From IMG/VR virus record IMGVR_UViG_3300012931_000759, positions 248,001 to 312,000 of that record: 64,000 bases of DNA, one strand, 5' to 3'. Of the stretch, positions 20,401 through 36,782 are shown piece after piece; within the stretch, counting starts at the first letter, position 1, and each line of letters starts with the position of its first letter. Position numbers and translations under genes: made by a program. The notes beneath the pieces are model-generated. The model was given only the letters and a program-made list of their open reading frames with translations. It was not told the origin of the DNA and ran no database searches.

Positions 20401-23400
20401 AGTCCTTTTTGAAGGGGCCTACGATCCCCGCCATCCAAGCGTTGGTGAAAGCATTCACGGCCATCAACCCAACTATTGAGGAGTCCGTGTTTTTCGAATG
20501 GCTTGTCGGCCGCGACTACCTCAACCTACTGCCCATGACTCTCACTACGGCGCCGGACTCCTCCGAGGATGCGATGTTTGCCCCTGGCAAGTTCGGGTAT
20601 GGACTGTTACTCGACAGCGCGGGCCAGACGGCCAAGTTACCAGCCACCTCCAACATGCGTTTCGCCGACGGTACGTGGGAATGCCAGCTGACGCCCCTTT
20701 GGATGGGGGTTGACAATGACGCCGCGCTTACTTTGGATCTTCTGTTCGACGGCTATAGGATGCCGTCCAAGGTGTTCATTGGCGCGGGCGGATACAGCCC
20801 GGACGCCATCCCGTTCACCATCGACCGCTCGGACAGCAGGGTGCTGGGTCGGCCGCTAGCGCTACACAGCGAGAACGGATATTTTATCTGGTACGACAGC
20901 ACGGCTAAGAAATGGCGGCTGCGGACTAGGGGGCCGATCGACGAGCAACGGCTTTTTGAGGGTCAAATCACGTCCTCGGGTCAGTTTGGAGAGGTAACGG
21001 TAGCTTCCTCGGCGGACGGATACCTACCAGCCGACGGCTACGGTCTGGACGAGACCAACGACTATGTGAGATCCACCGACGACCTGCTGGAATTCTCGTT
21101 CTCGGTGGACGGGTACGATCTACTGAACCTCCCCCTGGACGCCTATGGCGACGGCTATTACGCGGCTTTTGACGGTGTGGATTTCCAATCGGACAATGTG
21201 CGCTACCTGTTCGACACCGGCGTCGAGTCGGCCAGGAACAGGATGTCGCTCTACAAGGATGGCCGTGGTTTTCTCAGATACCGTGTCTACGACTCGAATG
21301 GCCGCATGAAGATGCTTAGCGCGAACATCCGCGACTGGGAAGCCGGAGCAACACATCCTGTGGCGGTCGCCTGGAAACTCGGTACCGTGGAGCAGCGGGA
21401 CGAGATGCACCTGTTCGTGGATGGCCGCGAGGTGCCGAACACCTACAGATTCACCGGATACTTGCCGGTTCCCGCGACAGGCGGCGTGAAGTACATGGAC
21501 TCGGTTGGCGAGACTCTTGTATCCGGCGTCCCGGTCCCCACCGTGGGCGGCAGCGACATGATCACGGTTATCGGCTCGGATACCGTTTACTCCGCCAGCG
21601 CGACCTTCGGATCGGACGGAGTCGGGATCGGGGATCCCTTCGTTATCCTGGACTCCACGACGGATGGCGCCAACACCCGAATGTCCCCCTACGTTTTCGT
21701 CGCGGAGATTGTCGACGAAAACAGGCTGCGTCTGGAGATAGGTCCGGCCGGATCTGGTATCCCGTACCTCATGATATCCAGCTTGACCGGTGTCAGGTAT
21801 TCCATCAACCGGTTAACGCTCGCCACGGTGGCCGATCCCCTCATAGAGAAAGTCCGCGTCTATACAGTTTCACCAACCGGCGAGGCGATGGAACTCAGAT
21901 CCCCGAACGCGCTCAATCCCGACTACTCGTTCGATCGCGACGGATACCAGGACTATATCCTGCTTGACAATGGCCTTCCCATCGGTTGGGATATCGTGCT
22001 GTACTCCTACGGATTAACCCAGCAGAGAAGCAGGCAGTTCGCATATGTGTGGCCGTACAGGAGGACAAACCTCCTCAAGACTATCATGCCGCAGCCGACG
22101 GCCGTGTCTAAGATTAGGATTACGAACATCATCAGCAGGCGTGCAAACATCGAGGCGGGGGCCTTCGCGCTCGTGGCCACCATCGTCGGCGGCCACCCGG
22201 TCCAGATGCTTGCCTCCAACCTGCCGTTCTGCCAGCCCAGCGAGTCCATACACGGGCGTCGATTGGCTGCCACGATCATGGGCGACAACTTCGACTTCGG
22301 TGGCTTCAACCAGGTGACCATCACCGGCGACACTTTCGATGGGTACGGGGGCGAGACCCTCGCTTTTACGAATGTCGGCACGCTCGAGACAACCAGGTAT
22401 TTCCTATCAATCACGAGCGTCTCGGCCGCCTTTACACCGCTCGACCTGTCCAGGTCGGCTGGGACGATAGAGATCCGCGAGGCCCTGCCGCTCACGCAGC
22501 AAGAGAACGGCGGTGACTACGCCCAGGTGCGGCTGTCGACCCTGGATCAGTACGGTTTGGACGGCACCCTGTCGGTGGGCGCAAACACCTTCAGTGACGG
22601 ATATGCCAGATTCGGGGTCGAGGATATCAACCGGTTGATCTACATCGAGGGCGCTCCTCCGTCGTGGCCTTCGCACGTGTTCACGATCACCGACGTACAA
22701 CTCGACCCGTCCGGAACAGTCAAGGACTCCGACACGGTGGTCGTATCTGGGCAGATGCCACCGGTCGGCACATATACAGGTCTGCGCTGGTCGGAACGGA
22801 ATCTGTCCTTCGCCGACTCCGGATTCGCCAACGGCCTGATCACGCTGGAGATCGTCGGCAGCGGAGGCTTACCTTTCCTGCTGAGTAACTGCTGGTACCT
22901 GGTGGATTTCCCGAGCTATGCAATCATTCCGCTGGAAACTGTTCCGGAGACATTGTATGTGGGCTCCGACATGTTTGGGGCAAACCAGGCAGGAGCTGTT
23001 ATCGACGAAATGCACAGTCTGGCCGAAATGCTGACCGACACCGGTGCCGGTGAGGTGTTGCCAAGCTCCGGTAGGAGTGTCACCTCCGAGGCGGAAAGTG
23101 TGCGCGAACTGACGCCGATCACACAGTCGTTGGCATTGTTCCACTTCAACGGATGCCTGAAAAACCGGGCGAGCTTCTACTCCAGCTTCTCGCGTTCGTT
23201 CTTCCAGAGTTCCAACAGTGTCAACAGCCTGTTCGGGCAGTCGGGTGTCTTCAATGGCCAAGGCGCGCTCTCGATGGACAATGCCGGAATATTCTTCAAT
23301 AATGCCGGAACCATAGAGTTCTGGGTGAGCCCGATACTCGACACGTACAACGACCCGACCCGCAGGTACTATATCGACTTGAGCGCAGAGCAAACAGTAG

Positions 23401-24347
23401 TCGGAGACCCCATCTCGGCCCTCGTGGTTAGGATGCCGGTCAGGGCGCGATCGGTCGTTTCGGTAACGCTGCCGGATAGCGACACGAACTTCTTCACAGG
23501 AGGTTCACTGGGCGCGGATGGTGTGACTGTCAGGCTAGGGCAGAGGATTCCGGTACAGAGCCAGCCCACGGTCACATATATCCCGATCACCAGCCAAGGG
23601 GATCGCTTCAGCGTCTTTAAGGATGACAACGGGATGCTGGTCCTGTCCGTTACGGCCTCCGGAGTCGACTACCAGATCTCTGCGCCTGTCTACTGGAAAA
23701 AGAACACCTGGCATCGCGTGTGGATCGGATGGAGCCTGAACAACCCAGACAACCAGGACCGCCTGGTGCTTATGGTGGATGGGGCCGAGCGTGGCGTCAT
23801 CAGGTACGGAACCGGCCTCAGATACGGCCTAGCCGGACGGTACGGTATGCCGACCGTCTGGGGACAAGCTCGCGCGGGAACGATTGCCTCGAGGAACATC
23901 CTGGCGGACATCAACATGACGGACTTCTTCAGCACCGTACAGATCGGTAACGACTTCTCCGGCCAGTCGCCCGCCATGGCTAGGATGGACAACCTGCGGT
24001 TCTCTAGCCAGATGAGGTCGATCCTCTACCTAGGCGGACGCGGGCCCGGCCAACTGATAGGGAACGACCTCCTGTACACAAGCAACGTGAACACGGCCCA
24101 GCCCGTGATCGAGGACGCATTGACTACGTTGCTTCTGGATTTCGACACGGATAGCAGCCTGGTCGAGTACCTTATTGCGGTACACGACAGCGCTGCAGGC
24201 ATTTTCGATTTCTTCGTTACCGTCATCGACTCATTCAAACTGATCCCGAACCAGGACGTCAGGGACCTGATTAAGAAGCTGATCAACAGGTTGAAGCCGG
24301 CGCACACCAGAGCGTTTGTGGACTTCGGGGACACGGAAGATTGTTAA
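17439..24347 (+). CDS. Giant baseplate wedge protein (gp7/P2 gpI-like) with N-terminal Ig-like and two LamG-like domains
   Basis: 2302 aa. C-terminal LINRLKPAHT motif of wedge proteins; LKGPTIPAIQALV wedge core; LamG-like strands GTIEFWVSP, WHRVWIGW, LMVDG, MDNLRFS. Contains 8 DGY. Confidence 0.75.
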   Translation: MTNLRAKQLMVRSSTTIEVTFTASLDPNIAPSNITIDGVGGTPSDLAVKSVSVSGAKLTVTVKPMISGALYEMVLASTSTQFFVGAHGERLVEDGATNHLFFTGIEEESDVFQALRDSLPPIYDPKGGSLLRDLIMPIAREIEAAQHAANEIGAANYISVEVTDEGITRGSGPYDRFANEGVFKILRVGATATSVGTSKTITYTSFPSDPISLQQDVVAEETVSNASGSLNSFDGLLISLSNGPVINVSSIVLVRGTSQYVYDITLFRYGLEESKYDSANAYSAFDIKNNQVRLSTAAVGPSFPLPQGNDIIKIGYTYKRLGRIPSVSSVSITTTVNVVRESVPAVATSFFLGHAPIVNRTGDTVTTGGIQWINPAANFDPTLKHPAFVTEIPFSESSLPSKAGEFAVNYSTGQVIVFGVDGSGTDGTTVVPPVATYWFKRTFQDGLDYNLFSDLWEIAAVPGRDLEGSPATISFTYEETFAEGTDFLFASHVEQIDERVNNRLIGDFGLTTEYGPVNEVFRIFNETTGELYRVSRISGNQVFFQATTPPRLVQMAREAASFNEHIQAQIVVSEEVAIPSKSFVAFRVELQDANIATATADYIGASFNSSLLFSDTSTFAREMYFDPEDTEGNNLQRLQQVGDYMVNYANGVAHVAVLSGSSTDIGDASYRFGEILTANKHITEVSNLYRSASAKAENVKIFTIGAIVDETVEIVDLEQVGESSVDGNAIQVSSGTVEVSQDAMRVRHIFQVTDLRTASAPVDFVAGAVISSSQPTTITLDPDGVPVTDSGANGVGLEVQTDGFRKYIEVSRLSNIVSGPTQLATLVDKVADPDFLAREYWVIDMATGQNYFALGNDSYIDASANRIYLPSNVPDSAIGTLVEAQYRAALLDGAAVLVDYTPGDIFIDYTYVADEILVSYEYGDNVLDWSVSDNLSAGQTYYVSYRYGALRDALRDNFGVLTGIEELATAPLSLERELYRAGLAGSLQSFLKGPTIPAIQALVKAFTAINPTIEESVFFEWLVGRDYLNLLPMTLTTAPDSSEDAMFAPGKFGYGLLLDSAGQTAKLPATSNMRFADGTWECQLTPLWMGVDNDAALTLDLLFDGYRMPSKVFIGAGGYSPDAIPFTIDRSDSRVLGRPLALHSENGYFIWYDSTAKKWRLRTRGPIDEQRLFEGQITSSGQFGEVTVASSADGYLPADGYGLDETNDYVRSTDDLLEFSFSVDGYDLLNLPLDAYGDGYYAAFDGVDFQSDNVRYLFDTGVESARNRMSLYKDGRGFLRYRVYDSNGRMKMLSANIRDWEAGATHPVAVAWKLGTVEQRDEMHLFVDGREVPNTYRFTGYLPVPATGGVKYMDSVGETLVSGVPVPTVGGSDMITVIGSDTVYSASATFGSDGVGIGDPFVILDSTTDGANTRMSPYVFVAEIVDENRLRLEIGPAGSGIPYLMISSLTGVRYSINRLTLATVADPLIEKVRVYTVSPTGEAMELRSPNALNPDYSFDRDGYQDYILLDNGLPIGWDIVLYSYGLTQQRSRQFAYVWPYRRTNLLKTIMPQPTAVSKIRITNIISRRANIEAGAFALVATIVGGHPVQMLASNLPFCQPSESIHGRRLAATIMGDNFDFGGFNQVTITGDTFDGYGGETLAFTNVGTLETTRYFLSITSVSAAFTPLDLSRSAGTIEIREALPLTQQENGGDYAQVRLSTLDQYGLDGTLSVGANTFSDGYARFGVEDINRLIYIEGAPPSWPSHVFTITDVQLDPSGTVKDSDTVVVSGQMPPVGTYTGLRWSERNLSFADSGFANGLITLEIVGSGGLPFLLSNCWYLVDFPSYAIIPLETVPETLYVGSDMFGANQAGAVIDEMHSLAEMLTDTGAGEVLPSSGRSVTSEAESVRELTPITQSLALFHFNGCLKNRASFYSSFSRSFFQSSNSVNSLFGQSGVFNGQGALSMDNAGIFFNNAGTIEFWVSPILDTYNDPTRRYYIDLSAEQTVVGDPISALVVRMPVRARSVVSVTLPDSDTNFFTGGSLGADGVTVRLGQRIPVQSQPTVTYIPITSQGDRFSVFKDDNGMLVLSVTASGVDYQISAPVYWKKNTWHRVWIGWSLNNPDNQDRLVLMVDGAERGVIRYGTGLRYGLAGRYGMPTVWGQARAGTIASRNILADINMTDFFSTVQIGNDFSGQSPAMARMDNLRFSSQMRSILYLGGRGPGQLIGNDLLYTSNVNTAQPVIEDALTTLLLDFDTDSSLVEYLIAVHDSAAGIFDFFVTVIDSFKLIPNQDVRDLIKKLINRLKPAHTRAFVDFGDTEDC

Positions 24348-24673: not shown

Positions 24674-24745
24674 GATGTTAAAATCCATCGGACTGCCTCC
24701 TTTGAAGTGTCTGGCTTACCGGTGGAAAATCGATGGAGGGCTGTC

Positions 24746-27574
24746 ATGAGTACAACACGTCTGCCTGTGGATTTAAAAAGGGTGGCATATTACGACGGGC
24801 AGCAGCTCACGCGCGATGACCTGCGCGACGAGCAGAACCGGCACGTCGGCATCGACGCGGCCACGGTCGCTAACTTCCTCGGAAGCGGGGTAGTGAGCGA
24901 CTCGGCAATTCCGCAGGTCCTTCTGGACACGGCGGAACTGAATCCCCAGCAGCAGGCGTTGCTCGACGCTTACTCGTTCGATGGGCAGAATGTCTACATC
25001 GGAACCGGACTGAAGCAGGTGTCGGATCCCGTGAATGGCGTGCTGCTAGCAGTCACGCTAACTGGCGTGGATCTCGTCGGCTCGATGGCGACCAAGGTAG
25101 CCATTATTGGCGAAACTTTCGGCGGGGGCCTTGTACACGACGAGCTTGTGTTCGAGGAGAATGGCACACAAGTTACGCGGGGGCGGTACAAAGAGGTGTT
25201 TGGCATCCTCCTCAATGACTTCGCAGGCAATCTATTCGGAAGTCTCTCCCCGGCAACCATCTATGTCGGCGGATATCAACTCGTGGGACGCTGTGTCGTC
25301 AGAGAGGCGGAGGCCTTGGAGGTCTCCATGGACACCCTGATAGCTTCGCAAACGGCTCAACCCAACCAGTTCTTCGGGAATTTCAAGCTCGGCAGCCCGT
25401 CATACACGCTGACTTCGTTATTCCAGGAGATCATTGGACCCTCGCATTCGCCCTCCGACCTTGGCATTAGTATTGCCTCGGTCGCCCAGCGGCAGATCGA
25501 CCCGGACGACGTGACAACCAGGATAGGGCAGAAGTTCCTGGCCACAGGGACGAACATCCAAAAGATCTCGATACTCGCGTCAGTGCTAAGGGACGAAAGC
25601 ACCCTGCCGGGAAACGAATACAATTGGTCGGGCCAGATCGTACTCAATCTCCTGGCGCTCCAGACGACAGTCGATTGTCCGGTGAAGCCGGTGCCCGATA
25701 ACCTCGAGGATTTCGATCCGGATCCCACAGTGGTAGCCCAGCTGTCGCTGGATGCGACGGATCTCGTGCGGCAAGGTGTCGTGCTGGATGGTTACGCTAG
25801 AAAAATCGATTTCGTGCTGACAGAGACCTCGATCGCCGATCCGCTGATTTCCCCCATTGAGCAGGGGCGTCACTATGTGTTCACCATCGGGCGCGCAGGC
25901 AATGCCAACGTCGGCACCCTGCTGTTCGAGGAAGCGGTCCACTCCACCCTGAATGGCTACATGGTAATCTACGACGGTACCCAATGGGTCAACATCTATG
26001 AGAGCGACATGTGGTTCGAGGTCTACGGCGATTATGTGAAGATCGCCGACGGCATCGCCTATCAGGAGGGCGTCGGTGTGGAGATCCCACGCTTGGCAGA
26101 GGATGCCAGCGGCGTCGAGTCCCCGAACTACGTGGGCCTGGTTCCATTCGCAACCACTGCCAAGGACGCCAAGAACTTCGTCCTCATGGAGGTGGAGACA
26201 ACCTACAGCGACACGCAGCAGGATCCACGAACGGGCAATCCGGTGTCCTCCAGGCTAGCGCCCTCCGCAGCCGTATCCATGGTTAAAGAGACGGATTTCC
26301 AGACGCAGCTTGCGGCGGACTTGGTGCCGCTCGCGCTGGCGCGTGCCACGGACGAGAACCCGAGGGGAAATCCCGTGTCCATATTGGGCACAACTACATT
26401 GGCTGGTGCTGTGTATGGCAACCACATACATGTTATCGCGCCGAACGCCGATCTGCTGTCGAACAACATCGTTGGCTCCATGTTGCTGCCGGACTCTGCC
26501 GAGAACAAGGAGTACCGCATTGTCTCTGTGTTGCTTAGCATGGACGCCTACGGCGATGTGGACGGTGACGGCGAGATCACATTCGCCGACCTTGCCATCG
26601 TGAACACTTGGCTACCCGACGGCTACGACCTCTCGGACCCCGTAGACCAGCAAAAGCTGATCGACGGCAAAGTCCCCCTGGACCGCGTCCTGCGGGCCGA
26701 CGTAAACGGGGACGGGAAAGTGGATATCACTGACGCGACGCTCATCCAGGCCTTCCTGGACAAGAGCATTTCGACGTTCCCGGCCGGTTCCTCTTTCCAG
26801 CGTATACTTATCAGGGTGGAGAACAAGTTGAATCCGCTGGCGGCCCAGGCCGACATGGCGGCGGACAACCCAGATTTCACCACTGTTCCGTTCGTCTCGA
26901 TTCCGTGGACGGTTGGCTACTTTAGGACATGGCTGCCTGACCGGATTGACCTGTGTGACATGCGTCGGTTGGTGCCGACCACGTTCACCGCTTTGCCAGA
27001 TGGCGATACCTGCTACGGTGGCCGGAACGACTTCTTTATTCCCGGTAACCAGCTATTGGACGGCTATGTTATGGACAAGTTCGGCGACCCGCATCGGCTC
27101 GACTTCGAGGTTGCCCATCTGTCCCTGAGGATCCCTGTGACCGACACGCTGGGTAACCCTACAATCCTCGACGGCTATGTGGGATTCCTACTATTCGACT
27201 CCTTCGTGGCCGAATCCTCGCTCGGCAAAACTTCGGCAGGTTTCCAGGCCATGAAGTACAGTGACCGGAGTTTCGTCCAGATCGGCGATTTCGGGGCCGG
27301 GCGTGTGCGCATCACAGCCTCACTACAGTCGCTAGCGAACGCCTGGCCGTCCCCGTTTGGTGGGAATGTGGACGACCTGGTCGGAATGTACTACGACCCA
27401 ACCACTTCGCTCCTGGTGCTACAAACCAGGAACCTGCTGAACGACGGCTATGGCAACCTACTGCCGTCCCAATGTATGCGGATCCTGGTAACTGTCTACC
27501 TGAAGAAGGCAGGATTCGCGAATACGACGCAAGATGTGACGGATGGCCAGATGCGCACCCTGTTGGGTATTTGA
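24746..27574 (+). CDS. Tail fibre / baseplate-attached protein with a dockerin-like domain
   Basis: Start moved to ATG 24746 (SD GGAGG). N-terminal RVAYYDGQQLTRDDLRDEQ is typical of baseplate-attached fibre proteins of contractile systems. Paired GDVDGDGEITFADL / ADVNGDGKVDITDA repeats. Contains 5 DGY. Confidence 0.7.
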   Translation: MSTTRLPVDLKRVAYYDGQQLTRDDLRDEQNRHVGIDAATVANFLGSGVVSDSAIPQVLLDTAELNPQQQALLDAYSFDGQNVYIGTGLKQVSDPVNGVLLAVTLTGVDLVGSMATKVAIIGETFGGGLVHDELVFEENGTQVTRGRYKEVFGILLNDFAGNLFGSLSPATIYVGGYQLVGRCVVREAEALEVSMDTLIASQTAQPNQFFGNFKLGSPSYTLTSLFQEIIGPSHSPSDLGISIASVAQRQIDPDDVTTRIGQKFLATGTNIQKISILASVLRDESTLPGNEYNWSGQIVLNLLALQTTVDCPVKPVPDNLEDFDPDPTVVAQLSLDATDLVRQGVVLDGYARKIDFVLTETSIADPLISPIEQGRHYVFTIGRAGNANVGTLLFEEAVHSTLNGYMVIYDGTQWVNIYESDMWFEVYGDYVKIADGIAYQEGVGVEIPRLAEDASGVESPNYVGLVPFATTAKDAKNFVLMEVETTYSDTQQDPRTGNPVSSRLAPSAAVSMVKETDFQTQLAADLVPLALARATDENPRGNPVSILGTTTLAGAVYGNHIHVIAPNADLLSNNIVGSMLLPDSAENKEYRIVSVLLSMDAYGDVDGDGEITFADLAIVNTWLPDGYDLSDPVDQQKLIDGKVPLDRVLRADVNGDGKVDITDATLIQAFLDKSISTFPAGSSFQRILIRVENKLNPLAAQADMAADNPDFTTVPFVSIPWTVGYFRTWLPDRIDLCDMRRLVPTTFTALPDGDTCYGGRNDFFIPGNQLLDGYVMDKFGDPHRLDFEVAHLSLRIPVTDTLGNPTILDGYVGFLLFDSFVAESSLGKTSAGFQAMKYSDRSFVQIGDFGAGRVRITASLQSLANAWPSPFGGNVDDLVGMYYDPTTSLLVLQTRNLLNDGYGNLLPSQCMRILVTVYLKKAGFANTTQDVTDGQMRTLLGI

Positions 27575-27590: not shown

Positions 27591-28388
27591 ATGGCAACCG
27601 CTAACATCATCATCAACCAGACGGGCAGGCCGCCGGGCCTGCCAGACCAAAGCCGCGACGATCTGGCACTCAGCGTCCCGGTGATCCTGACCAACGAGAA
27701 CAACTCAGGAGTAGTGGCCTGGAACTGGCGGCTGCTATCCAAGCCAGCCGGGTCGGGCACCGGCCTGGACACGCCAACTCTGTCATCCTGCCAATTTACG
27801 CCCGACCTGGCGGGGTCGTACCTGGTTCAGCTGGTCGTGAACGGTCAGACTCGGGCGACGGCGATCGCCGCCGTGAAGACGACATTCCTCGGACTGCGCA
27901 TTCCGGCGAAGGGGGAGACCACCGAGCTGGGCGGCTGGGAGGCCGCCTTCCAAGAGTTGTTCCGACAACTGGAGGACGGCATCCAGTCGGGCGGTGGTAC
28001 CAGTGACCGGACGTTGCTGTTTTCGGACGACACTCAGTTCACTGAGGTGGGCGACACGTTCATCACGAAGAAAACCTTCAGGGTTGTGCGCGACCCGGAC
28101 AAACCACCAACACAGTGGCGGATTCTGGTGTCACTGTGGGGATCGTCGTCGTACGGCCTTGTTGAGTGTCGAGTGAACGCGATCGGAGAAGGTGGTACTG
28201 ACACGGTTACGCTACCTTCCGTCTTCGGAAATGCCGAGATCGTGGTGGCTGCAAACCTCACCATTAGTAATGCCAACGAACCTGTAGGGTCGATCGTGAC
28301 AATCGAGATCCAGTTAAGGCTGGTCTCAGGGGGCGGGGCGGCCAGCCTCCAGTACACCGACGTGTTTGCTCTCTACGCGGCGGCCTGA
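27591..28388 (+). CDS. Virion protein with PKD/K319L-like Ig domain
   Basis: SD GGAGG; WNWRLLSKPAGS..FTPDLAGSYLVQLVVNG is a PKD-like signature. Confidence 0.65.
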   Translation: MATANIIINQTGRPPGLPDQSRDDLALSVPVILTNENNSGVVAWNWRLLSKPAGSGTGLDTPTLSSCQFTPDLAGSYLVQLVVNGQTRATAIAAVKTTFLGLRIPAKGETTELGGWEAAFQELFRQLEDGIQSGGGTSDRTLLFSDDTQFTEVGDTFITKKTFRVVRDPDKPPTQWRILVSLWGSSSYGLVECRVNAIGEGGTDTVTLPSVFGNAEIVVAANLTISNANEPVGSIVTIEIQLRLVSGGGAASLQYTDVFALYAAA

Positions 28389-28404
28389 CGGGCGCAGAAT
28401 CTTC

Positions 28405-29337
28405 ATGGATTTTGTGGTAATGTTCGACAAGAAATTTATGGTCGAGGGTCTTGTCTGCGTGTCTTCGATACTTGAGTATGGGCCGGACGCAAAGGTGTTC
28501 GTCCTATGCTTAGACCAGGAAGTGGACAAAATTGTCCAGCGGCATCTGTCGTCCGATCGCGTCGTTTGCATCCAACTCCTGGAGCTGGAGTACAAATACC
28601 CGGCCATAGCGGCCACCAAACCGTCAAGGCCGTGGGCTCCTTACACCCAGTCGCTGAAGCCCTTCCTGCCCGAGTACATCTTCAATACCCACGGAACCAA
28701 GGCGTTAACATACGTCGATTCGGACATGCTGTTCTGGGGCGATTGTAGTGAAATCGATCGCGAGATGGGTGACTGCTCCTTCATGGTGACCTCTAGGGGG
28801 CAGGACCCCCCTCCGGACTACGGGTATTTCAACGGGGGTTGCTTCTCTTGCCGCGACGACCGGAACTGCCGCTTGTTCCTAACCTGGTGGCAGGATCGGT
28901 GTGTGGAATGGTGCCTGTGGCAGACTGGCCCTAACGGAGCGTTTGGCGAGGAGGGGTACTTGAACATCATTGTTACTGAGCCGAATAGGTTTGGTGGCAT
29001 ACACGTGTCGAGGCATCCCGGCATTAATCTTGCTCCTTGGAACGTAAAAATGCATAAGCTTGAGAGTTGGAACGGAGGTTTTGTGGTAGATGGCCATTTC
29101 CCGCTAGTATGCTACCATTATCAGGGATTCGGCGGTATCAAATTTCCTTCCGCGATGCCGGTGGATATGATGTTCAAGAAACTCACTGCCCTATATGCCC
29201 CGTACCGCGACAAGCTGTCCGCTACAACCAAGGTGACGGCAGCCGTCCTGCCTCCGGAAAACATGGCACTCGATGGGCGGAAGATTTACCAGGAAGGCGG
29301 TGTTTACAGGAAAAGGATGAGGGCCAACCTCCTGTAA
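28405..29337 (+). CDS. Putative GT-A glycosyltransferase (paralog of 35941 and 36783)
   Basis: Start at ATG 28405. YVDSDMLFW (DxD), FNGG, WQDRCVEWC, HPGINLAPWN and YHYQG are shared with two downstream paralogs. Confidence 0.75.
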   Translation: MDFVVMFDKKFMVEGLVCVSSILEYGPDAKVFVLCLDQEVDKIVQRHLSSDRVVCIQLLELEYKYPAIAATKPSRPWAPYTQSLKPFLPEYIFNTHGTKALTYVDSDMLFWGDCSEIDREMGDCSFMVTSRGQDPPPDYGYFNGGCFSCRDDRNCRLFLTWWQDRCVEWCLWQTGPNGAFGEEGYLNIIVTEPNRFGGIHVSRHPGINLAPWNVKMHKLESWNGGFVVDGHFPLVCYHYQGFGGIKFPSAMPVDMMFKKLTALYAPYRDKLSATTKVTAAVLPPENMALDGRKIYQEGGVYRKRMRANLL

Positions 29338-29339: not shown

Positions 29340-29710
29340 ATAGGGAAAACACAAAGACTTCCAAATACACAACCGACCGTTTAAAAAGGAGTAATCTTCC
29401 CTTTTTTCTTTGTTTCTGCTGTCAAAAATCTATCAATAGATTGGCATTAAGGGCAAGATGCGACCTAGGATCAAACCACAGCTTGTAAACAAATGTATCC
29501 ATTGTACTTGCAAGGTTATCTCTTCGCGATGTGATGAATGCCTTAGATACCAGCAGTGCTGTAGTTTTTTTTTTGAGCGTTTGGGAGCGCAACGGGACGT
29601 TACAAAGGGAACGTGGAGCAGGCAGTTGCCCTGTCCAAATTGAATGATGTCTCGATTCCAAAGGCGATACAGTGGTGTCGAGAAAACCGTTTCAGGATCT
29701 ACATTCCTAG
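29340..29710 (+). pseudogene. Decayed zinc-ribbon + HTH gene (endonuclease-associated type)
   Basis: Three successive frames give CFCCQKSINRLALRARC / CIHCTCKVISSRCDEC / LSKLNDVSIPKAIQWCRENRF. AT-rich, with a T10 run at 29565-29574. Confidence 0.35.
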
Positions 29711-29783: not shown

Positions 29784-29969
29784 ATGAGCGAATTGTCTAA
29801 GTATGCGGAACGAAAGCAGATTAACATCCGGTTGGAATTAGAACTCCACGATTTTCTAGTAGAGTACGCCAGGCAGAACTACAAAACCGTCACGGCCGTC
29901 GTGCGTGAGATGATAGCCGCCCTCTACCGACAGCACCAGGCGGCACAGAAGACTGCGGACGATGAATAG
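29784..29969 (+). CDS. Ribbon-helix-helix (Arc/CopG-like) DNA-binding protein
   Basis: KQINIRLELELHDFLVEYARQNYKTVTAVVREMIAALY fits the beta-alpha-alpha RHH pattern. The start is more likely 29784 (or 29772) than 29613. Confidence 0.7.
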   Translation: MSELSKYAERKQINIRLELELHDFLVEYARQNYKTVTAVVREMIAALYRQHQAAQKTADDE

Positions 29970-30038
29970 GCGCATGGACGCGATGGCTATGCTGATGGGA
30001 TTTCATTGACGGTGCTTGCCGCCATGTACAATTGCGAT

Positions 30039-30201
30039 GCGGTTGCGGAGCAACCGTGGATCGAAATTTAAATGACGCGCGGAGAATTTATCTCCGTGCC
30101 TTGATGGCTATATCTGTTCCTGCGGATAGCAGGAATACAACCGTCTATCAGCTTTGCTCAACTATGGATAAATCCAGATAGGCGGAAAGGTAGCAGAAAG
30201 C
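30039..30201 (+). ncRNA. Putative structured RNA leader upstream of the glycan operon
   Basis: Four consecutive 7-9 bp stems plus a nested 4-bp stem in about 150 nt of non-coding DNA (see findings); no known family recognised. Confidence 0.4.
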
Positions 30202-30203: not shown

Positions 30204-32474
30204 ATGAAAGTAAGATGGCACACAATGGCCGGCACCAACCATTCGTGGGCGTTTGTAGCCCAGGCCTTGGCACGGGCGATGAAACAGAGTGGTCATTCTG
30301 TGTTCATCAAATCGACAAACGGTCTAGAGCATTTTCCCGAAGACCTGAAGCCTCTTCTTCTGCCGGGCTATCACAGCCACCCCTCGTTACCAGAGGTTGC
30401 CTTCCTTGGCGAAAAGGGCATCACCAACTCCTTGTCTGATATTCCCAGTTGTGACATAAGAGAGTCTCCAGACCAGAACAGGCCATACGACCTGGAACTC
30501 GCCTACACCATCCTCTACCAGATACCGCGTCGGTTCTATGCCGAATCGGCATGTAGAATGGTTATTTGGAACTTCGAGAGTTCAATCATGCCCCCTGGAT
30601 GGCAGATGTATCATCGCGGCGTGGATTACATCCTACCATCCAGCCAGTACTCCTCAGATATTTTCCTCCAGAATGGTGTACCGGCCTCGAAACTTGTAGT
30701 TGTGCCGCATGGCGTGTACCGTGAGATGTTCCACCCCGGCATTCCGCCGTTCAAACTTCACACACAGAAGCGGATCAAGTTCCTACACAACGCAATCCCA
30801 CACCACCGCAAGCTCCATGAACGCGTCATCGGGGCGTATCTTGACGCATTCACCGGGGACGACGACGTGTGCCTGGTGCTGAAGACCAAGTTCCTCCAGC
30901 CTTCCAAGGACAAGCCCTTCGAGGTCGACGTGCGCGAAATCCTGGAACGGAAACTGAAAGGCTGCCCGAATCCGCCCGAGATCGAGGTGATCACATCCTT
31001 CGTCCCCGATATCGGATCGCTCTACACTGCCTGCGATGCGGTCGTCAGTATGAGCTCGTGTGAGGGCTATTGTCTTCCTTTGCTTGAGGCCTTGGCTTGC
31101 GGAAGTGTAGTTATCGCGCCCCGGCATGGCGGCCAACTTGATTTCCTGGATGACAGGAATGCGCTACTCGTGGACACTGGCGAGATGAAGGCTCCCTTGA
31201 GTATGCAGTACTGGACGCATGCCCCGGAGGCCGTCGTGGGCGACCCTAGCGAGAGGCATTGCGCCGAACTCATGCGGCGCGTATACGCCGATCCGGCGGG
31301 GGAAAAGGCGCGCGTCGCCGAGGCAGCTCGCGTGACAACCGAGCGGTTCACGTGGGAGGCGGCAGCCAAACAGATCGTCGACCTGGCCGAGACTCGCATG
31401 ACCGAAAAGGCAATTTCTCCGTCGCCCCGCAAGAGAAGCGTCCTGTACGTGGTGCCCTACGACATGGCCGGTGGCGGCGAAATGTGGGTACGCGAGACCA
31501 TCAAACGCCTCGACAAGAGCCGGTACGAGCCGAGCGTTGTGTTTCCGCTGGGAGCGAGGCCCGAGCTGGTCGCCCTGTTCAGCGACCTCGGGGTGCCATG
31601 CGACGACCTGAGGAACCAAGGGACAGGCAATGCGCTGAAGTGTATGATCGAGTCCGGCAAACCTGACATCGTCCATTTCTACAACAGCCTACAGGTCTAC
31701 AGCCTCCTTATGCGCACGATCCAGGAGGGTGCGTGGGGAGGCAAGCTGGTCGAGACCGTACACAGCGAACTGATGTGGCCGGACTCGATGATGAAGGTCG
31801 CCGCACGACGCGGCGTCTCCATGATCGTCGGCGTCTCCGAGACCATCTGCGCGCGACTTGCGCGCCTCGGCAATCCGAATGTCAGGCACCTTCCGCAGCA
31901 GGTCGCATGGGACCGCTTCTCCGTCCCGAGGGGCAAGGAGGTTCTCGGAGAGATGGGGTTACCCACCGACAGGTTTACTGTGGGTACGGTGGCGCGCCTC
32001 TCGCCCGAGAAGAACATCCCGATGGTCCTGGCCTGCGCCAGGGCGATGCCCGACGCGCTGTTCGTGGTCGTGGGTGAGGGCCCGCAGGCCACAGTCCTGA
32101 ATGGAATGGCTTCCGGCCTCGCAAACGTGGTGTTCGCCGGACGGCGATCCGACGTCGAACGGTTCTATGCCGCCTTCGACGTCCTGCTTCTACCATCCAC
32201 CATGGAGGGTCTGCCGCTCACGATACTCGAGGCGATGGCGGCCGGGACACCGGTCGTTGCCTCCAAGGTCGGTGCCATTCCCGAGGTGGTGTCCGACGGA
32301 ACGAACGGTTTCCTGGCCTCCAAGGCGCAGGAGTACGTGGCGGCCTTGGAGAAGCTGCGCGACCCGGCATCCAGGGATAGCATGGGCAAAAATGCCATGG
32401 CGCTGGCTGACATCCTGAGAATGCGCGGCAACACCCAGAACATTAATACATTGTACGACTCGCTATTCAGGTAA
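30204..32474 (+). CDS. Double GT4-type (GT-B) glycosyltransferase
   Basis: Two GT-B units: SSCEGYCLPLLEALACG and PSTMEGLPLTILEAMAAGTPVVAS, each with the EX7E motif. Confidence 0.9.
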   Translation: MKVRWHTMAGTNHSWAFVAQALARAMKQSGHSVFIKSTNGLEHFPEDLKPLLLPGYHSHPSLPEVAFLGEKGITNSLSDIPSCDIRESPDQNRPYDLELAYTILYQIPRRFYAESACRMVIWNFESSIMPPGWQMYHRGVDYILPSSQYSSDIFLQNGVPASKLVVVPHGVYREMFHPGIPPFKLHTQKRIKFLHNAIPHHRKLHERVIGAYLDAFTGDDDVCLVLKTKFLQPSKDKPFEVDVREILERKLKGCPNPPEIEVITSFVPDIGSLYTACDAVVSMSSCEGYCLPLLEALACGSVVIAPRHGGQLDFLDDRNALLVDTGEMKAPLSMQYWTHAPEAVVGDPSERHCAELMRRVYADPAGEKARVAEAARVTTERFTWEAAAKQIVDLAETRMTEKAISPSPRKRSVLYVVPYDMAGGGEMWVRETIKRLDKSRYEPSVVFPLGARPELVALFSDLGVPCDDLRNQGTGNALKCMIESGKPDIVHFYNSLQVYSLLMRTIQEGAWGGKLVETVHSELMWPDSMMKVAARRGVSMIVGVSETICARLARLGNPNVRHLPQQVAWDRFSVPRGKEVLGEMGLPTDRFTVGTVARLSPEKNIPMVLACARAMPDALFVVVGEGPQATVLNGMASGLANVVFAGRRSDVERFYAAFDVLLLPSTMEGLPLTILEAMAAGTPVVASKVGAIPEVVSDGTNGFLASKAQEYVAALEKLRDPASRDSMGKNAMALADILRMRGNTQNINTLYDSLFR

Positions 32475-32488
32475 GGTGGCGCAGGGAC

Positions 32489-35400
32489 ATGGATGAGATT
32501 AACCCTAAGTTGTGGGACGGCGACTTCGGGGAATTGCGCGAAGGTGAGGGCGAGGGCCGTCAAGGTTGCCGCTTGGAGGGGTCGAGCGCTTCCGCGAACG
32601 TGCCACTTATCGGCATTGAGCCCTGGTCGGTGTACCGCTTCCAAGTAACCTTAAGGAACGCGGGTGGAAGCGGTCGGCTGTGCTTTAATCTGCGCGTCAA
32701 TGGCCAGGATTTTCCGCCCGCCATGCTCGACTGTCCAGCCGACCCGCTTTGGCGCGTGTTCGAGGTCGATGTGGCGACAGCCCGGTGCGTCAAGGGTACA
32801 CCGGGCATCTTTAGGATCCATCGTCTTCCCGTGGATTCGGGAACGATGCTCGTAGGGCGTATCGCCGCAGAAAAGTTGCCGCATGGCGTCGGGCCCACAC
32901 CTGAACCTAGGTTAGTGGCCACGGAAGGCAACATCGGCATCTGTGCGCCCGTCGCAAAATACGCTGTGTTGATGGAGGAAGGTATGGATGAGTTCGACCA
33001 GCAATTTTGGCGCGGTAAGAACCTTGTCGCCAAGAAGGACGATCGGGGCGCAAAATGTCTCTCCATGGAAGGCGACAGATCCATCATATTCGTGCCCGTC
33101 AAGGTAGAGCCGAACTCGGTGTACAGGTGCCAACTCGACCTAAGGCGCGAGACCGGGAATGGCAAAATCTACTGTAACCTCTACGCCAACCGAAGTTTTG
33201 ATTTCCCACACATCTCCCTCGCGTGCGAGCTGGGCAGCTGGGGAACCTACGACATCCAGGTCAGGACCGGGACTTTTCCGCCCAACCTCCCCATTGTGCT
33301 GAGGTTGTGGCGGTCGCCTGCGGGAACCGGATCCCTGCTCGTGAAGCGCATAGCGCTCGAGAAGCTGCCGCCGGACGCGCCTGCCGAGGAGCCGAAACTG
33401 GTGGTGTCCTCGTCTGTCGAACGGCTTATGGTGGTCCTTCCGCCGACGGTGGAAAAGACGATCCCTGCGCCCAAGGGGATACGCGTGCCGCGCGCAAACA
33501 AGCCGCCCCCGATCGAAGTACTTCCACACCGCAAAAGAGTGCCCGACCTGCCCAACAGGCTGTCCTACTCGCGTTTTGAGCGGGAACCCACAAAAGTCCT
33601 CGTTGTGTCAGAGATGGGGGACGAGACGGCTATGCGGGAGGCCTTCGAGGCCATAGGTATCTCATGCGAGGGCGCAGCCATGGCCGGAAATGTATCGCGG
33701 TTCCCCGACATGGCGCAGAGCGCCGCCGCGAACTGGATCCACTTTCACATCCGCAGAGGAACACTCTTAACTCCGGAGATTGTCGATGGGATCAGAAACG
33801 CCAGGCCGGGCATCGCAGTCACTATGTGGGCGCAACCCGGATGGCCGCTTTTCGACGCGGCATTGCTCCGGGTTCTCCGCGCCGCCGATCTTGCGCTGGT
33901 TGGTGGTGACATCGAGCTAGCCACCTGGCGCGCTGCTGGATGCTTTAACGTCGAACTGTGGGATCCGGGTGCTACAAACTTGTCCCCTTCCGGCGAGGAT
34001 TCTGGATACGATGTGGTAGCGGTGTCAGACGATCCGTCCGATCCACATTCAGATCTTGCTGCGGCGCTGGCCGGGAAGTTTGGCGCGCGTGCCGTCTTCG
34101 CGCCTAGGGAGGATGTTGGCAGGCGTGTTGCCCTGGGCGGAGTCGGTGTAGCAGTGTTCGCAGACCAATGGCCATCACGCAGCCTGTTCGGCCTCATGGC
34201 CACCGGAATCCCAGTGGTTGCTAGGCGGTCCCTTGGCACCATGGAGTGGTGTCGGAACGGAATCGACCTTCGCCTTTTCGACACCCCTGAGGAATGCGTA
34301 GCTATCGTTTCCCAGCTGCTAGACTGTCCCGAGGTCGCGCAGACTATTGGCGCGGAAGGGGCAGCCCTGGCTGCCACCCATTCGCGGATCGCACGCGCCA
34401 AGGAGCTAGCCACACGGCTCGGGTGCTTTGAGACAACCATGACCTGCTTTCCCAAGGACCGGACATCCTACACGTTCGGACATGTGCTCTGTGCCATGAA
34501 AGCGGCACCCCCGGAGCTGATGGGCCGCAGTGGCAACGGGGAGGTGGATGTTTCAACCGCTTCGTTCGCCGAATGCCGCGATCTTGAAGCCAAGATCATC
34601 AGATCCAACCCGGATCTATTACATATCCATCTGGAGGACGAGGACGACGGTCTGCCTTGGCGCGACCTGCTGATAGATCTCCGCAGGCGCATGCCGCATA
34701 TGCTGGTTACAGTGTGGCATCATGGTGGCCAGGGGGTCGACAGGAGGATGATGGATCTGCGTTTCCTGGTTGACCACATGTTTGTCGGGGATACAGAATC
34801 GCTGGCACGCTACCGCGCGGAGTCTATCGTAGGCGTCGCGGAATGGAGTGCCGGGGTAGCCCCTTCGGAAAATCCTATAGCTTTCCGCGAGGCCTTGTAC
34901 ACCCTTGCCAAGAGTATGGGGACGAGAAGGGACACTTTCCTCAGGGGCGCAGACGGACAAATGGTTGACCTAACAGTGTTTATCGGCACCTGTAACCGGT
35001 ACGACCAGCTACGGAGAGCGGTCGAGACAGCGCTTGCCTCGGCAGGCAATCGAACAATAGAAATCATCGTGAACGATGCCGGATCCACCGATGGAACACA
35101 GGATTGGATGCGCAAGATGGCAGTCACCGACAAACGGATTGTTCCAATCTTCTCCGGTAAACGCACAAGTTTCACACAGGCCTTCAACGAGGCTCTACAG
35201 ATTACAAAAGGTAAGTACATCTGCTGGCTCAGCGACGATATAGTATCAGAGGGTCAGTCCCTATCCGACATGTGCTCAATTATGGACGAGATCGAACCCA
35301 TGGACATGGGCGGGTTCTGCGTACGCAACTCCTGGGGCTACGAGTACACAGTCAGGAAGGACACCGGATTCTATTTCCCGCCAGTTGGGTGTGTATACAC

Positions 35401-35938
35401 GGAAACCATGCGCAAACTCAACGGTTTCAACATGGACTATCCGTACTACTCCCAGGACACCGACCTCGCCATGAGGATGTTAAGGCTTGGCGGGAGGATC
35501 GTGGCTTGCGTAGGCTGCCGCCTCCTACACAACTGCCAGAACGACGAGCTGCGTCGGAGCAATTCGGCAAACCACACAAACGCGATGACGGATGTCAAGT
35601 ATAACCTCGCGGCCTGGCGGCCTGGGGAATACGCCAAACTTCCCTATCCCAGCGTGCTTTTGGTTCCGACCGGCGGCTGCGGGCCAGAGGATATCCTCCG
35701 GATGGCAAGGGCTATCAGGGCCCAGTATTCACATTCGCACATGTCCGTAGGCGGCGAAGCCTCGGAACGTCTGGATACGCGCGGATCGAACTCCTTCCTG
35801 CGTAAAATCCCGACAGCCAATTGTCGGACGCCCTTCCTGTTCGACCTTGTGGTCGAGGTTGTGCCGGGCGGCGGCAATCTTGTGCGCCCATCCGACAGGT
35901 TAGATATACCTTTTGTGCGCAAACTCTTACAGGGATAA
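32489..35938 (+). CDS. Multidomain glycosyltransferase: two tandem beta-sandwich repeats + CgeB-like GT-B region + GT2 domain
   Basis: Residues 1-131 and 166-294 are homologous repeats. The central region resembles the spore-maturation CgeB/Glyco_trans_1_2 type. C-terminal GT2: TVFIGTCNR..IIVNDAGSTDGT..ICWLSDD. Confidence 0.75.
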   Translation: MDEINPKLWDGDFGELREGEGEGRQGCRLEGSSASANVPLIGIEPWSVYRFQVTLRNAGGSGRLCFNLRVNGQDFPPAMLDCPADPLWRVFEVDVATARCVKGTPGIFRIHRLPVDSGTMLVGRIAAEKLPHGVGPTPEPRLVATEGNIGICAPVAKYAVLMEEGMDEFDQQFWRGKNLVAKKDDRGAKCLSMEGDRSIIFVPVKVEPNSVYRCQLDLRRETGNGKIYCNLYANRSFDFPHISLACELGSWGTYDIQVRTGTFPPNLPIVLRLWRSPAGTGSLLVKRIALEKLPPDAPAEEPKLVVSSSVERLMVVLPPTVEKTIPAPKGIRVPRANKPPPIEVLPHRKRVPDLPNRLSYSRFEREPTKVLVVSEMGDETAMREAFEAIGISCEGAAMAGNVSRFPDMAQSAAANWIHFHIRRGTLLTPEIVDGIRNARPGIAVTMWAQPGWPLFDAALLRVLRAADLALVGGDIELATWRAAGCFNVELWDPGATNLSPSGEDSGYDVVAVSDDPSDPHSDLAAALAGKFGARAVFAPREDVGRRVALGGVGVAVFADQWPSRSLFGLMATGIPVVARRSLGTMEWCRNGIDLRLFDTPEECVAIVSQLLDCPEVAQTIGAEGAALAATHSRIARAKELATRLGCFETTMTCFPKDRTSYTFGHVLCAMKAAPPELMGRSGNGEVDVSTASFAECRDLEAKIIRSNPDLLHIHLEDEDDGLPWRDLLIDLRRRMPHMLVTVWHHGGQGVDRRMMDLRFLVDHMFVGDTESLARYRAESIVGVAEWSAGVAPSENPIAFREALYTLAKSMGTRRDTFLRGADGQMVDLTVFIGTCNRYDQLRRAVETALASAGNRTIEIIVNDAGSTDGTQDWMRKMAVTDKRIVPIFSGKRTSFTQAFNEALQITKGKYICWLSDDIVSEGQSLSDMCSIMDEIEPMDMGGFCVRNSWGYEYTVRKDTGFYFPPVGCVYTETMRKLNGFNMDYPYYSQDTDLAMRMLRLGGRIVACVGCRLLHNCQNDELRRSNSANHTNAMTDVKYNLAAWRPGEYAKLPYPSVLLVPTGGCGPEDILRMARAIRAQYSHSHMSVGGEASERLDTRGSNSFLRKIPTANCRTPFLFDLVVEVVPGGGNLVRPSDRLDIPFVRKLLQG

Positions 35939-35940
35939 AT

Positions 35941-36780: not shown

Positions 36781-36782
36781 AC

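What the first reader, a model, noticed from the sequence alone, without database searches (positions are those of the whole stretch)
28366..29337. A glycosyltransferase is the last gene of the tail operon
Seen in sequence: the GT starts 16 nt after the PKD-like virion gene and is separated from the main glycan cluster by about 870 nt holding a relic, an RHH gene and a structured leader. Two paralogs sit in the main cluster. Inference: co-transcription with the fibre genes makes this a candidate initiating or fibre-specific transferase, and genetically links the tail and glycan modules.
Basis: partly seen in the sequence, partly recalled or inferred. Interest (0 to 1): 0.6.

Follow-up and report, generated by a model that had tools for sequence, protein, structure and literature searches.

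The report
Tail-fibre-linked GT8-like glycosyltransferase in jumbo phage
A jumbo phage from a wetland carries a very divergent glycogenin-like sugar transferase as the last gene of its tail-fibre operon, in a position conserved in ten related phages, so it probably decorates a fibre protein with sugar, although nobody has shown this yet.

Summary
The gene is real. Its true start is the ATG at 28405, 16 nt after the upstream stop; it ends at 29337 (310 aa). The window lies in a 340-kb IMG/VR phage record.

- **Position:** the tail copy belongs to its own clade. All ten members with readable context lie 0-16 nt after a gene ending in the same jelly-roll domain, downstream of the baseplate and fibre genes.
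- **Operon boundary:** no promoter-like site precedes it. A weak hairpin and a conserved phage promoter-like motif follow it, ahead of the RHH gene.

Two corrections:
- It is "last" only through a deletion. Relatives carry a Gly-rich fibre-like gene after it, sometimes split by a radical-SAM CXXX-repeat cassette. Here only the last 27 codons of that gene survive, fused in frame to the transferase.
- The tail and glycan modules are adjacent even in relatives that lack this gene.

"Fibre-specific" is plausible but untested. "Initiating" has no support. This is a new member of a known kind, of moderate interest.

The parts
28405..29337 (+). GT8-like (GT-A fold) glycosyltransferase, 310 aa; the catalytic core is residues 1-283
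29254..29337 (+). Last 27 codons of the GT: relic of the 3' end of a deleted Gly-rich fibre-like gene, fused in frame
   Evidence: The peptide PENMALDGRKIYQEGGVYRKRMRANLL aligns with the conserved C-terminus of the Gly-rich proteins that lie downstream of the GT in L004, L005, L006, L007, L026, L027 and L029.
27591..28388 (+). Fibre-tip candidate: Ig/PKD-like N-domain, helix, C-terminal jelly roll; the constant upstream neighbour of the GT
   Evidence: PF22352 hits at E 0.0086. The model has pLDDT 83.7. It matches TNF-like lectins and CBMs at TMt 0.43-0.49. The C-domain is conserved in 10 of 10 contexts.
24707..27574 (+). 955-aa fibre protein with a dockerin-type Ca-binding domain; enriched in DGY
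   Evidence: Dockerin_1 hits at E 2e-08. Orthologues sit in L006, L007, L009, L010, L025, L026 and L030. It has 5 DGY against 0.26 expected.
17439..24347 (+). 2302-aa tail/baseplate-distal protein
   Evidence: It follows Baseplate_J, ORF 14174-17428. Orthologues occupy the same place in L006, L007, L025 and L026.
29381..29410 (+). Weak A/U-rich hairpin followed by a T-run: a decayed terminator-like site at the end of the tail unit
   Evidence: The hairpin appears in the fold. L026 has a G+C-rich hairpin with a T-run at the aligned position. The simple terminator scan did not call it.
29426..29455 (+). Phage promoter-like motif AAATCTATCAATA-N6-GCAT at the head of the RHH/glycan unit
   Evidence: The motif sits at the same place in L026, L009 and L007 and in L010. 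In the genome, 17 of 22 + strand copies are intergenic although 87% of the genome is + strand ORF. No copy lies in window 1-29425.
29784..29969 (+). RHH (Arc/MetJ-like) regulator gene, 61 aa, conserved ahead of the glycan cluster
   Evidence: phrog_876 hits at E 9.4e-06 and phrog_582 (Arc-like) at 0.0018. It is 55-82% identical in L026, L009, L010 and L007.
30032..30196 (+). The 'structured leader': relic of the 3' end of a TnpB-like gene plus 45 nt
   Evidence: It is 90% identical to genome 123501-123665. There it is the end of an ORF with a Cas12f1-like_TNB domain, E 6.7e-14. The fold z-score is -4.8. It has no Rfam family.
30204..52343 (+). Glycan cluster: double GT4, a GT2-containing 1149-aa protein, methyltransferases, GT2 and GT47-like enzymes, and the nucleotide-sugar enzymes FdtA, DegT, RmlA/B-like, GMD and epimerases; two GIY-YIG genes are inserted
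   Evidence: The assignments come from Pfam. No protein rich in transmembrane segments is present.
35941..36780 (+). Cluster paralogue A of the GT8-like family
   Evidence: It is 36% identical to the tail copy and falls in the cluster clade, support 99/92.
36783..37637 (+). Cluster paralogue B of the GT8-like family
   Evidence: It is 40% identical to the tail copy and falls in the cluster clade.

Best explanation
ORF 28405-29337 encodes a soluble, metal-dependent, retaining-type GT-A glycosyltransferase of a very divergent GT8-like family.

It is transcribed late, at the end of the baseplate/tail-fibre unit, and is probably translated just after the fibre-tip gene that always precedes it.

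In the infected cell it most likely transfers an alpha-linked hexose from a UDP-sugar onto a tail-fibre component. Candidate acceptors are the jelly-roll tip protein, the DGY-rich fibre proteins and, in relatives, the Gly-rich protein. The sugar could go directly onto the protein or onto a sugar placed by the neighbouring glycan cluster.

Shown:
- the fold and the conserved motifs;
- the paralogy with the cluster copies;
- the conserved position;
- the operon-boundary motifs;
- the deletion and fusion.

Inferred:
- co-transcription;
- donor type and stereochemistry;
- the acceptor.
For: **Fold**
- AF2 pLDDT 86.5.
- Every top Foldseek hit is GT8.
- In the viral library the nearest models are annotated GT8.
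- Atlas clusters are viral, with 11-27% of members carrying PF01501.

**Motifs**
- Invariant D105xD107.
- Conserved FDxxF/Y at the N-terminus, aligned to FDDNY of the WbbM GT8 domain.
- FNxG, [ED][EQ]GYLN and H238.

**Tail linkage**
- All ten tail-clade members with readable context lie 0-16 nt after a gene ending in the same jelly-roll domain.
- Tail and cluster copies form separate supported clades (100/98 and 99/92). Position changes once.
- The promoter-like motif lies after the GT, not before it, in the window and in L007 and L026; the same motif stands before the RHH gene in L009 and L010, which have no tail copy.

**Soluble**
- There is no hydrophobic segment in it. The cluster has no Wzx/Wzy-like membrane protein.

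**Precedent**
- Phage virion glycosylation by phage-encoded GTs, as cited in PMC12619734 and PMC11256854.
Against: - No transcript, activity or glycoprotein data exist.
- The complex prediction with the upstream protein gave no answer.
- L009, a complete 442-kb relative, keeps the jelly-roll protein, the fibres and their DGY motifs without a tail copy. The enzyme is therefore dispensable for fibre assembly.
- Sequence-only similarity to GT8 is weak: E 0.011 at best, and no Pfam hit for this protein.
- Gene neighbourhood alone does not identify an acceptor.
Confidence: 0.45

Rival explanations
1. It is a displaced member of the glycan pathway. It does the same job as its two cluster paralogues, adding one step to the glycan built by genes 30204-52343, whatever that glycan is attached to. 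It has no special relation to the fibre.
For: - It is 36-40% identical to the two paralogues in the cluster.
- The two clades are sisters.
- The cluster begins only 866 nt downstream.
Against: - The tail clade keeps its position next to the jelly-roll gene in 10 of 10 cases. That includes phages where 4-6 kb of other genes separate it from the cluster (L007, L025) and contigs with no GT1/GT2 nearby (L004, L027).
- A promoter-like motif separates it from the cluster.
Confidence: 0.2
2. It modifies a host envelope glycan, such as an LPS/LOS core or another receptor sugar, from the cytoplasmic side, as bacterial GT8 enzymes like LgtC do. That would block superinfection or stop progeny re-adsorbing to debris. 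It sits next to the receptor-binding gene because both track the same receptor.
For: - LgtC (LOS galactosyltransferase) and the WbbM GT8 domain are among the matches.
- The upstream C-domain resembles lectins and CBMs.
- From my own knowledge, receptor-modifying gtr genes lie beside tailspike genes in some temperate phages.
Against: - It is tightly coupled to a late structural operon on the same strand, not a separately expressed moron.
- Late expression leaves little time for new envelope glycan to reach the surface.
- No GtrA/GtrB/GtrC-like membrane partner is present.
Confidence: 0.15
3. It is an orphan on its way out. Its natural acceptor was the Gly-rich protein encoded downstream in relatives. 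After the deletion the enzyme has no substrate and persists only because the event is recent.
For: - The Gly-rich gene follows the GT in 9 of 10 contexts. Here it is deleted except for 27 codons.
- L026 shows an intermediate truncation.
Against: - All family-invariant residues are intact, there is no frameshift, and it is 61-65% identical to full-length orthologues.
- L009 has the Gly-rich gene without the GT, so the two are not obligate partners.
Confidence: 0.1
4. It is a structural or assembly factor rather than an enzyme. It occupies the slot after the receptor-binding gene where myoviruses usually encode a fibre assembly chaperone. The acquired C-terminal motif might tether it to the fibre.
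For: - Its position is directly after the tip gene.
- It carries the conserved C-terminal peptide of a putative fibre protein.
Against: - It has a complete GT-A catalytic fold with an invariant DxD.
- Orthologues lack the C-terminal motif.
- Complex prediction gave no support.
Confidence: 0.05

Closest known systems
CAZy family GT8 / Pfam PF01501 (glycogenin, LgtC, XXYLT1, Skp1 AgtA, GlyE, the LARGE1 GT8 domain) and the related GT24 UGGT catalytic domain
   Different: It shares only 6-17% identity with these enzymes. No Pfam hit reaches the threshold. It carries a WWQxRCxEWC helix motif of its own. The family is almost wholly viral or metagenomic.
Virion glycosylation in mycobacteriophages (Che8 and relatives; Freeman et al. 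2023, as cited in PMC12619734 and PMC11256854)
   Same: Phage-encoded glycosyltransferases are thought to decorate the phage's own structural proteins in the host cytoplasm.
   Different: In those phages the modified proteins are the capsid and tail tube, and the GT genes lie near the right end of the genome. Here the gene is embedded in the tail-fibre operon of a jumbo myovirus next to a 22-kb glycan cluster, and no glycan has been shown.
Giant-virus fibril or capsid glycosylation clusters (Mimivirus, chloroviruses; my own knowledge, not tested here)
   Same: The virus encodes its own nucleotide-sugar synthesis (RmlA/B-like, FdtA, DegT, GMD) plus many soluble GTs and no membrane export machinery. 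GT8-like viral proteins are the nearest structures in BFVD.
   Different: This is a bacterial virus. The acceptor is unknown. A tail-operon copy is separate from the cluster.
Tail-fibre assembly chaperones encoded after the receptor-binding gene (T4 gp38, Mu/P2 Tfa; my own knowledge)
   Same: It occupies the gene slot immediately downstream of the fibre-tip gene, with tight coupling.
   Different: Its fold is a catalytic GT-A, not a chaperone fold.

Membership tests
GT8-like GT-A glycosyltransferases (CAZy GT8 / PF01501) | GT-A Rossmann-type fold closest to solved GT8 structures | tested here: met
GT8-like GT-A glycosyltransferases (CAZy GT8 / PF01501) | DxD metal/nucleotide-sugar binding motif | tested here: met
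   D105 and D107 are invariant in 27 and in 38 sequences. They align to the DSD of the WbbM GT8 domain and the DAD of AgtA.
GT8-like GT-A glycosyltransferases (CAZy GT8 / PF01501) | Sequence match to the family model above its curated threshold | tested here: not met
   P0001 has no Pfam hit at E<=0.1. Only 3 of 27 relatives touch PF01501, at E>=0.0023. The best PDB profile hit has E 0.011.
GT8-like GT-A glycosyltransferases (CAZy GT8 / PF01501) | Second metal ligand (His) and DQ-type motif placed in the active site | tested here: inconclusive
   H238 and E182-E183-G-Y-L-N are conserved. Their placement against a solved active site was not superposed residue by residue.
GT8-like GT-A glycosyltransferases (CAZy GT8 / PF01501) | Retaining transfer from a UDP-sugar | not testable with these tools
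   This needs an enzyme assay.
Phage virion-glycosylation systems | A structural protein of the virion carries a covalently bound glycan that depends on the phage GT | not testable with these tools
   There is no isolate and no proteomic or RNA data.
Phage virion-glycosylation systems | The GT is expressed with, or linked to, structural genes | tested here: met
   It lies 0-16 nt after the fibre-tip gene in 10 of 10 contexts, and no promoter-like site lies between them.
Gtr-type O-antigen conversion modules | Membrane proteins GtrA (flippase), GtrB (bactoprenol GT) and GtrC | tested here: not met
   No protein with multiple hydrophobic segments lies between 24.7 and 53.8 kb. No such Pfam families were found.
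Tail-fibre assembly chaperones | A chaperone fold or family encoded after the receptor-binding gene | tested here: not met
   The position fits, but the fold is a GT-A enzyme and there is no PHROG tail hit.

The most novel reading that the evidence does not exclude
Jumbo phages of this lineage carry a dedicated fibre-maturation module at the distal end of the tail operon. It comprises a GT8-like transferase that glycosylates the receptor-binding tip or fibre and, in several relatives, a radical-SAM maturase that cross-links a CXXX-repeat, Gly-rich fibre protein. The adjoining 22-kb virus-encoded pathway supplies unusual sugars. If so, a bacterial virus builds a glycan-coated, RiPP-like cross-linked adhesion apparatus, much as giant viruses glycosylate their fibrils.
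Probability: 0.25. Interest if true: 0.7.

Novelty: new member of a known kind. Interest (0 to 1): 0.42.

Why it matters
If the enzyme does decorate the fibre, glycosylation of phage structural proteins would extend beyond its known examples, the mycobacteriophage capsids and tail tubes. It would reach the receptor-binding apparatus of environmental jumbo phages. It would also give the large virus-encoded glycan cluster next door a concrete target.

Fibre glycans could alter host range, shield the fibre from proteases or host defences, or mimic host surfaces.

The family has no Pfam model, so many phage genomes carry it as 'hypothetical protein'. The conserved gene pair of jelly-roll tip and GT8-like enzyme is a simple marker for finding and testing such systems.

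If instead it turns out to be just one more glycan-pathway enzyme, the finding is ordinary.

Tried and rejected
- **Family scans.** Pfam, PHROGs and NCBIfam on the protein gave no hit.
- **Phage records.** tblastn against 50,697 deposited phage records gave no match.
- **PDB by sequence.**
  - The single-sequence search gave only a chance-level methyltransferase hit.
  - Profile searches reached E 0.038 and 0.011 to the WbbM GT8 domain. That is suggestive but not significant alone.
- **Complex prediction** of the GT with the upstream tip protein gave no answer, score 0.00. This is not evidence either way.
- **Transcript mapping.** The only runs holding the stretch are two wetland DNA metagenomes that may be its source. 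No RNA run exists.
- **Sigma-70 promoter and intrinsic terminator scan** of 24-33 kb found no site near the gene and fewer sites than in shuffles.
- **Rfam** on 29300-30300 found nothing credible.
- **Folding** of 29330-29620 is not more stable than shuffles, z 0.09.
- **Does the tail GT occur without a glycan cluster?** Searching L004 and L006 for GT1/GT2 families found none. Both records are fragments (33% and 10% complete), so this is inconclusive.
- **DGY-acceptor idea.**
  - DGY is truly enriched in the fibre proteins.
  - It is equally enriched in L010, which lacks the tail GT, so it gives no specific support.
- **The large representative search** was not run. The family and its relatives were already in hand.
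Full report
**Setting.** The window is bases 248001-312000 of a 340,392-bp linear IMG/VR virus record, estimated 84% complete, so a jumbo phage. The only sequencing runs that hold the stretch are wetland DNA metagenomes. Nearly all genes lie on the + strand.

Upstream of the finding is a myovirus baseplate and fibre module:
- a tail-tube initiator-like gene, 1346-2176;
- a sheath initiator / gp25-like gene, 13660-14088;
- Baseplate_J, 14174-17428;
- a 2302-aa ORF, 17439-24347;
- a 955-aa ORF with a dockerin-type domain, 24707-27574;
- a 265-aa ORF with a weak PKD-like hit, 27591-28388.

Downstream, from 30204 to about 52343, lies a glycan cluster. It holds a double GT4 protein, a 1149-aa GT2-containing protein, methyltransferases, and GT2 and GT47-like enzymes. 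It also holds FdtA, DegT, RmlA/RmlB-like enzymes, GDP-mannose dehydratase and epimerases, and two inserted GIY-YIG genes. A tubulin homologue and replication genes follow.

**The observation.**
- The ORF ends at 29337. The mechanical ORF start is TTG 28366, inside the upstream gene. All homologues begin MDF..., which fixes the start at ATG 28405, 16 nt after the upstream stop.
- The distance to the first cluster gene is 866 nt.
- Two paralogues lie at 35941-36780 (36% identity) and 36783-37637 (40%).

**What the protein is.**
- No Pfam, PHROG or NCBIfam model hits it. No deposited phage record encodes a relative.
- The word search found 25 metagenomic homologues at up to 65% identity, all unnamed and without Pfam domains.
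- Their alignment shows an invariant D105-x-D107. It also shows conserved FDxxF/Y near the N-terminus, FNxG, WWQxRCxEWC, [ED][EQ]GYLN and H238.
- A profile of the family reaches only E 0.011-0.038 against the GT8 domain of WbbM and 0.26 against the Skp1 galactosyltransferase AgtA. The aligned motifs are the nucleotide-binding and DxD motifs.
- Three of 27 members touch PF01501 or PF03407 weakly.
- The AlphaFold model is confident: pLDDT 86.5, pTM 0.86.
- Every leading Foldseek match in the PDB is a GT8 enzyme: glycogenin, XXYLT1, LgtC, AgtA, LARGE1.
- In the viral structure library the nearest models are annotated GT8 proteins of cyanophages and giant viruses.
- Atlas clusters around it are viral and partly PF01501-positive.
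- It has no hydrophobic segment.
- I conclude it is a soluble GT-A glycosyltransferase of a very divergent GT8-like family. Metal dependence, a UDP-sugar donor and retaining chemistry follow by analogy and were not tested.

**Synteny and phylogeny.** The family was traced in viral contigs and metagenome assemblies.

A maximum-likelihood tree of 48 sequences splits the close relatives into two supported sister clades:
- a 23-member clade holding the window's tail copy (support 100/98);
- an 11-member clade holding both cluster paralogues (support 99/92).

In the tail clade, ten members have readable context: the window, L004, L005, L006, L007, L025, L026, L027, L029 and L030.
- All ten lie 0-16 nt after, or overlapping by one base, a gene whose C-terminal ~125 residues are homologous to the C-domain of ORF 27591-28388.
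- In the jumbo relatives that gene itself follows the 955-aa and ~2300-aa orthologues.

Members of the cluster clade lie among GT2, methyltransferase and GT47-like genes. Over the 16 rows scored, position changes once on the tree.

The tail copy is not universal, however:
- L009, a 441,904-bp record rated complete, has only cluster copies, as does L010.
- In both, the fibre module, the RHH gene and the glycan cluster are still adjacent.
- So the GT is not what links the two modules.

**The upstream partner.** The model of ORF 27591-28388 (pLDDT 83.7) has an Ig-like N-domain, a helix and a C-terminal jelly roll. The jelly roll gives moderate matches to TNF-like lectins and carbohydrate-binding modules, TMt 0.43-0.49. 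This fits a fibre-tip or receptor-binding protein but is not proof.

**'Last gene' is a derived state.**
- In relatives the GT is followed by a Gly-rich, fibre-like gene with a conserved N-terminus (MTWTxTGGGxHxGxDW...) and a conserved C-terminus (...RKIYQEGGxYxKRxRxNLL).
- That gene is whole in L005, L006, L007 and L029. It is also whole in L009, where it follows the tip gene directly.
- In L004, L025, L027 and L030 the gene is split by an inserted cassette:
  - The cassette encodes a radical-SAM 'CXXX-repeat target' peptide maturase (TIGR04115, 473-528 bits against a cut-off of 350).
  - The second half-gene carries 20-39 cysteines in CXXX repeats.
- L026 keeps only the C-terminal 153 residues.
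- In the window the last 27 residues of the GT, from residue 284 (nt 29254), are exactly this conserved C-terminus. Residues up to 283 align with the GT orthologues.
- A deletion therefore removed the Gly-rich gene, and any cassette, and fused its last codons in frame to the GT. The genome holds no other copy of the Gly-rich gene.
- In L007 and L029 further large, fibre-like ORFs follow before the RHH gene.

**Operon boundaries.**
- No sigma-70-like promoter or terminator is called near the gene.
- Just after the stop there is a weak A/U-rich hairpin with a T-run, 29381-29410. The aligned position in L026 has a G+C-rich hairpin plus a T-run.
- Directly after it comes AAATCTATCAATA-N6-GCAT at 29426. 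This motif is conserved at the same place in L026, L009, L007 and L010.
- In the whole genome the 10-mer core, with at most one mismatch, occurs 22 times on the + strand. Of these, 17 are intergenic and usually 13-125 nt before a gene, although 87% of the genome is + strand ORF.
- The nearest upstream copy is 5.9 kb before the window. None lies between it and 29426. In the relatives that carry the tail copy, none lies between the fibre genes and the GT.
- I read the motif as a phage promoter. On that reading the GT belongs to the tail transcription unit, and the RHH gene opens the glycan unit.
- This is inference from motifs. No RNA data exist.

**The intergenic 866 nt.**
- The RHH gene (29784-29969, Arc-like by PHROGs) is conserved in all jumbo relatives.
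- The 'structured leader' is real, z -4.8. It is 90% identical to genome 123501-123665.
  - There it forms the 3' end of a broken TnpB-like gene (Cas12f1-like_TNB domain, E 6.7e-14) beside fragments of an IS607-type serine recombinase gene.
  - So it is a mobile-element relic.
- In relatives the same site, between the RHH gene and the first glycan gene, holds LAGLIDADG genes or other unassigned ORFs.

**Mechanism.**
- The best-supported reading is a late-expressed soluble GT8-like enzyme that modifies a fibre component.
- The supports are the tight, conserved pairing with the tip gene across phages of different architecture, the separate clade, the transcriptional grouping and the absence of membrane partners.
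- The acceptor is unknown. Complex prediction with the tip protein gave no answer.
The enrichment is also present in a phage without the tail GT.
- 'Initiating' is not supported. From my own knowledge, most characterised GT8/GT24 enzymes add a sugar to an existing sugar, with glycogenin the exception.
- The rivals are a displaced pathway enzyme, a host-envelope modifier, an orphan after loss of the Gly-rich acceptor, and an assembly factor. They are scored in their own section.

**Comparison and novelty.**
- The enzyme is a new, very divergent member of the GT8-like GT-A class.
- Phage virion glycosylation is known for mycobacteriophage capsid and tail-tube proteins, with GT genes elsewhere in the genome.
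- A GT conserved inside a jumbo-phage fibre operon beside a large glycan cluster is a modest extension of that idea, and it is unproven.
- I rate it a new member of a known kind, interest 0.42.
- The side observation of a radical-SAM/CXXX-repeat cassette inside a fibre-like gene in relatives may be the more unusual lead.

Noticed in passing
L004:11300-14399, L025:6347-8617, L027:10811-13703, L030:6840-7529 (relatives; absent from the window): In these relatives a Gly-rich fibre-like gene is split by a cassette. The cassette encodes a radical-SAM 'CXXX-repeat target' peptide maturase (TIGR04115, above its cut-off). The downstream half-gene carries 20-39 Cys in CXXX repeats. This would be a RiPP-type maturase apparently acting on a phage structural protein.
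   Followed up: partly
window 30032-30196 and genome 123501-123665 (L028:2002-2166): A 165-nt structured element just upstream of the first glycan gene is 90% identical to the 3' end of a broken TnpB-like gene elsewhere in the genome. That copy sits next to IS607-type serine-recombinase fragments.
   Followed up: yes
window 29426-29455; genome-wide, e.g. 188185, 221835, 242095: The motif (A)AATCTATCAATA-N5-6-GCAT recurs about 20 times. Hits are commoner on the + strand (22 against 13) and 17 of those 22 are intergenic. It is conserved upstream of the RHH gene in four related jumbo phages, so it is a candidate phage promoter class.
   Followed up: partly
window 17439-24347 and 24707-27574: The tripeptide DGY is strongly enriched in the two large fibre proteins: 8 and 5 occurrences against shuffle means of 0.58 and 0.26. 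It is conserved in the orthologues, including in a phage without the tail GT.
   Followed up: partly
window 29455-29783: About 320 nt of A+T-rich sequence (the 29338-29783 gap has GC 0.42), including a T10 run near 29565, separates the promoter-like motif from the RHH start. It is absent from L026 and L009, and no homologue was found for it.
   Followed up: partly
window 43442-44422 and 45273-46481: Two GIY-YIG (LEM-3-like) endonuclease genes, one with HTH domains, are inserted among the nucleotide-sugar genes. Relatives instead carry LAGLIDADG genes between the RHH gene and the first GT. The glycan cluster is therefore a hot spot for mobile elements.
   Followed up: no
L004:10001-11296 and protein P0012: Two tail-clade GTs carry a C-terminal GNAT acetyltransferase domain (431 and 421 aa). 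This hints that the transferred or accepting group is acetylated in some lineages.
   Followed up: no
genome 113253-121754 (outside the window): A second fibre-gene cluster holds repeated copies of the Ig/PKD-like N-domain of ORF 27591-28388. The TnpB relic lies just downstream of it.
   Followed up: no
window 52300-53790 and 58908-63892: A tubulin/FtsZ-family gene (PhuZ-like) lies directly after the glycan cluster. Further on are a PrkA-family kinase and a DUF444/VWA gene pair.
   Followed up: no
L009:479-1945: In the 442-kb relative the tip protein is expanded to 488 aa by tandem HxxGGxDEISVxGLxGxLxxPQ repeats between the Ig-like domain and the jelly-roll domain.
   Followed up: no
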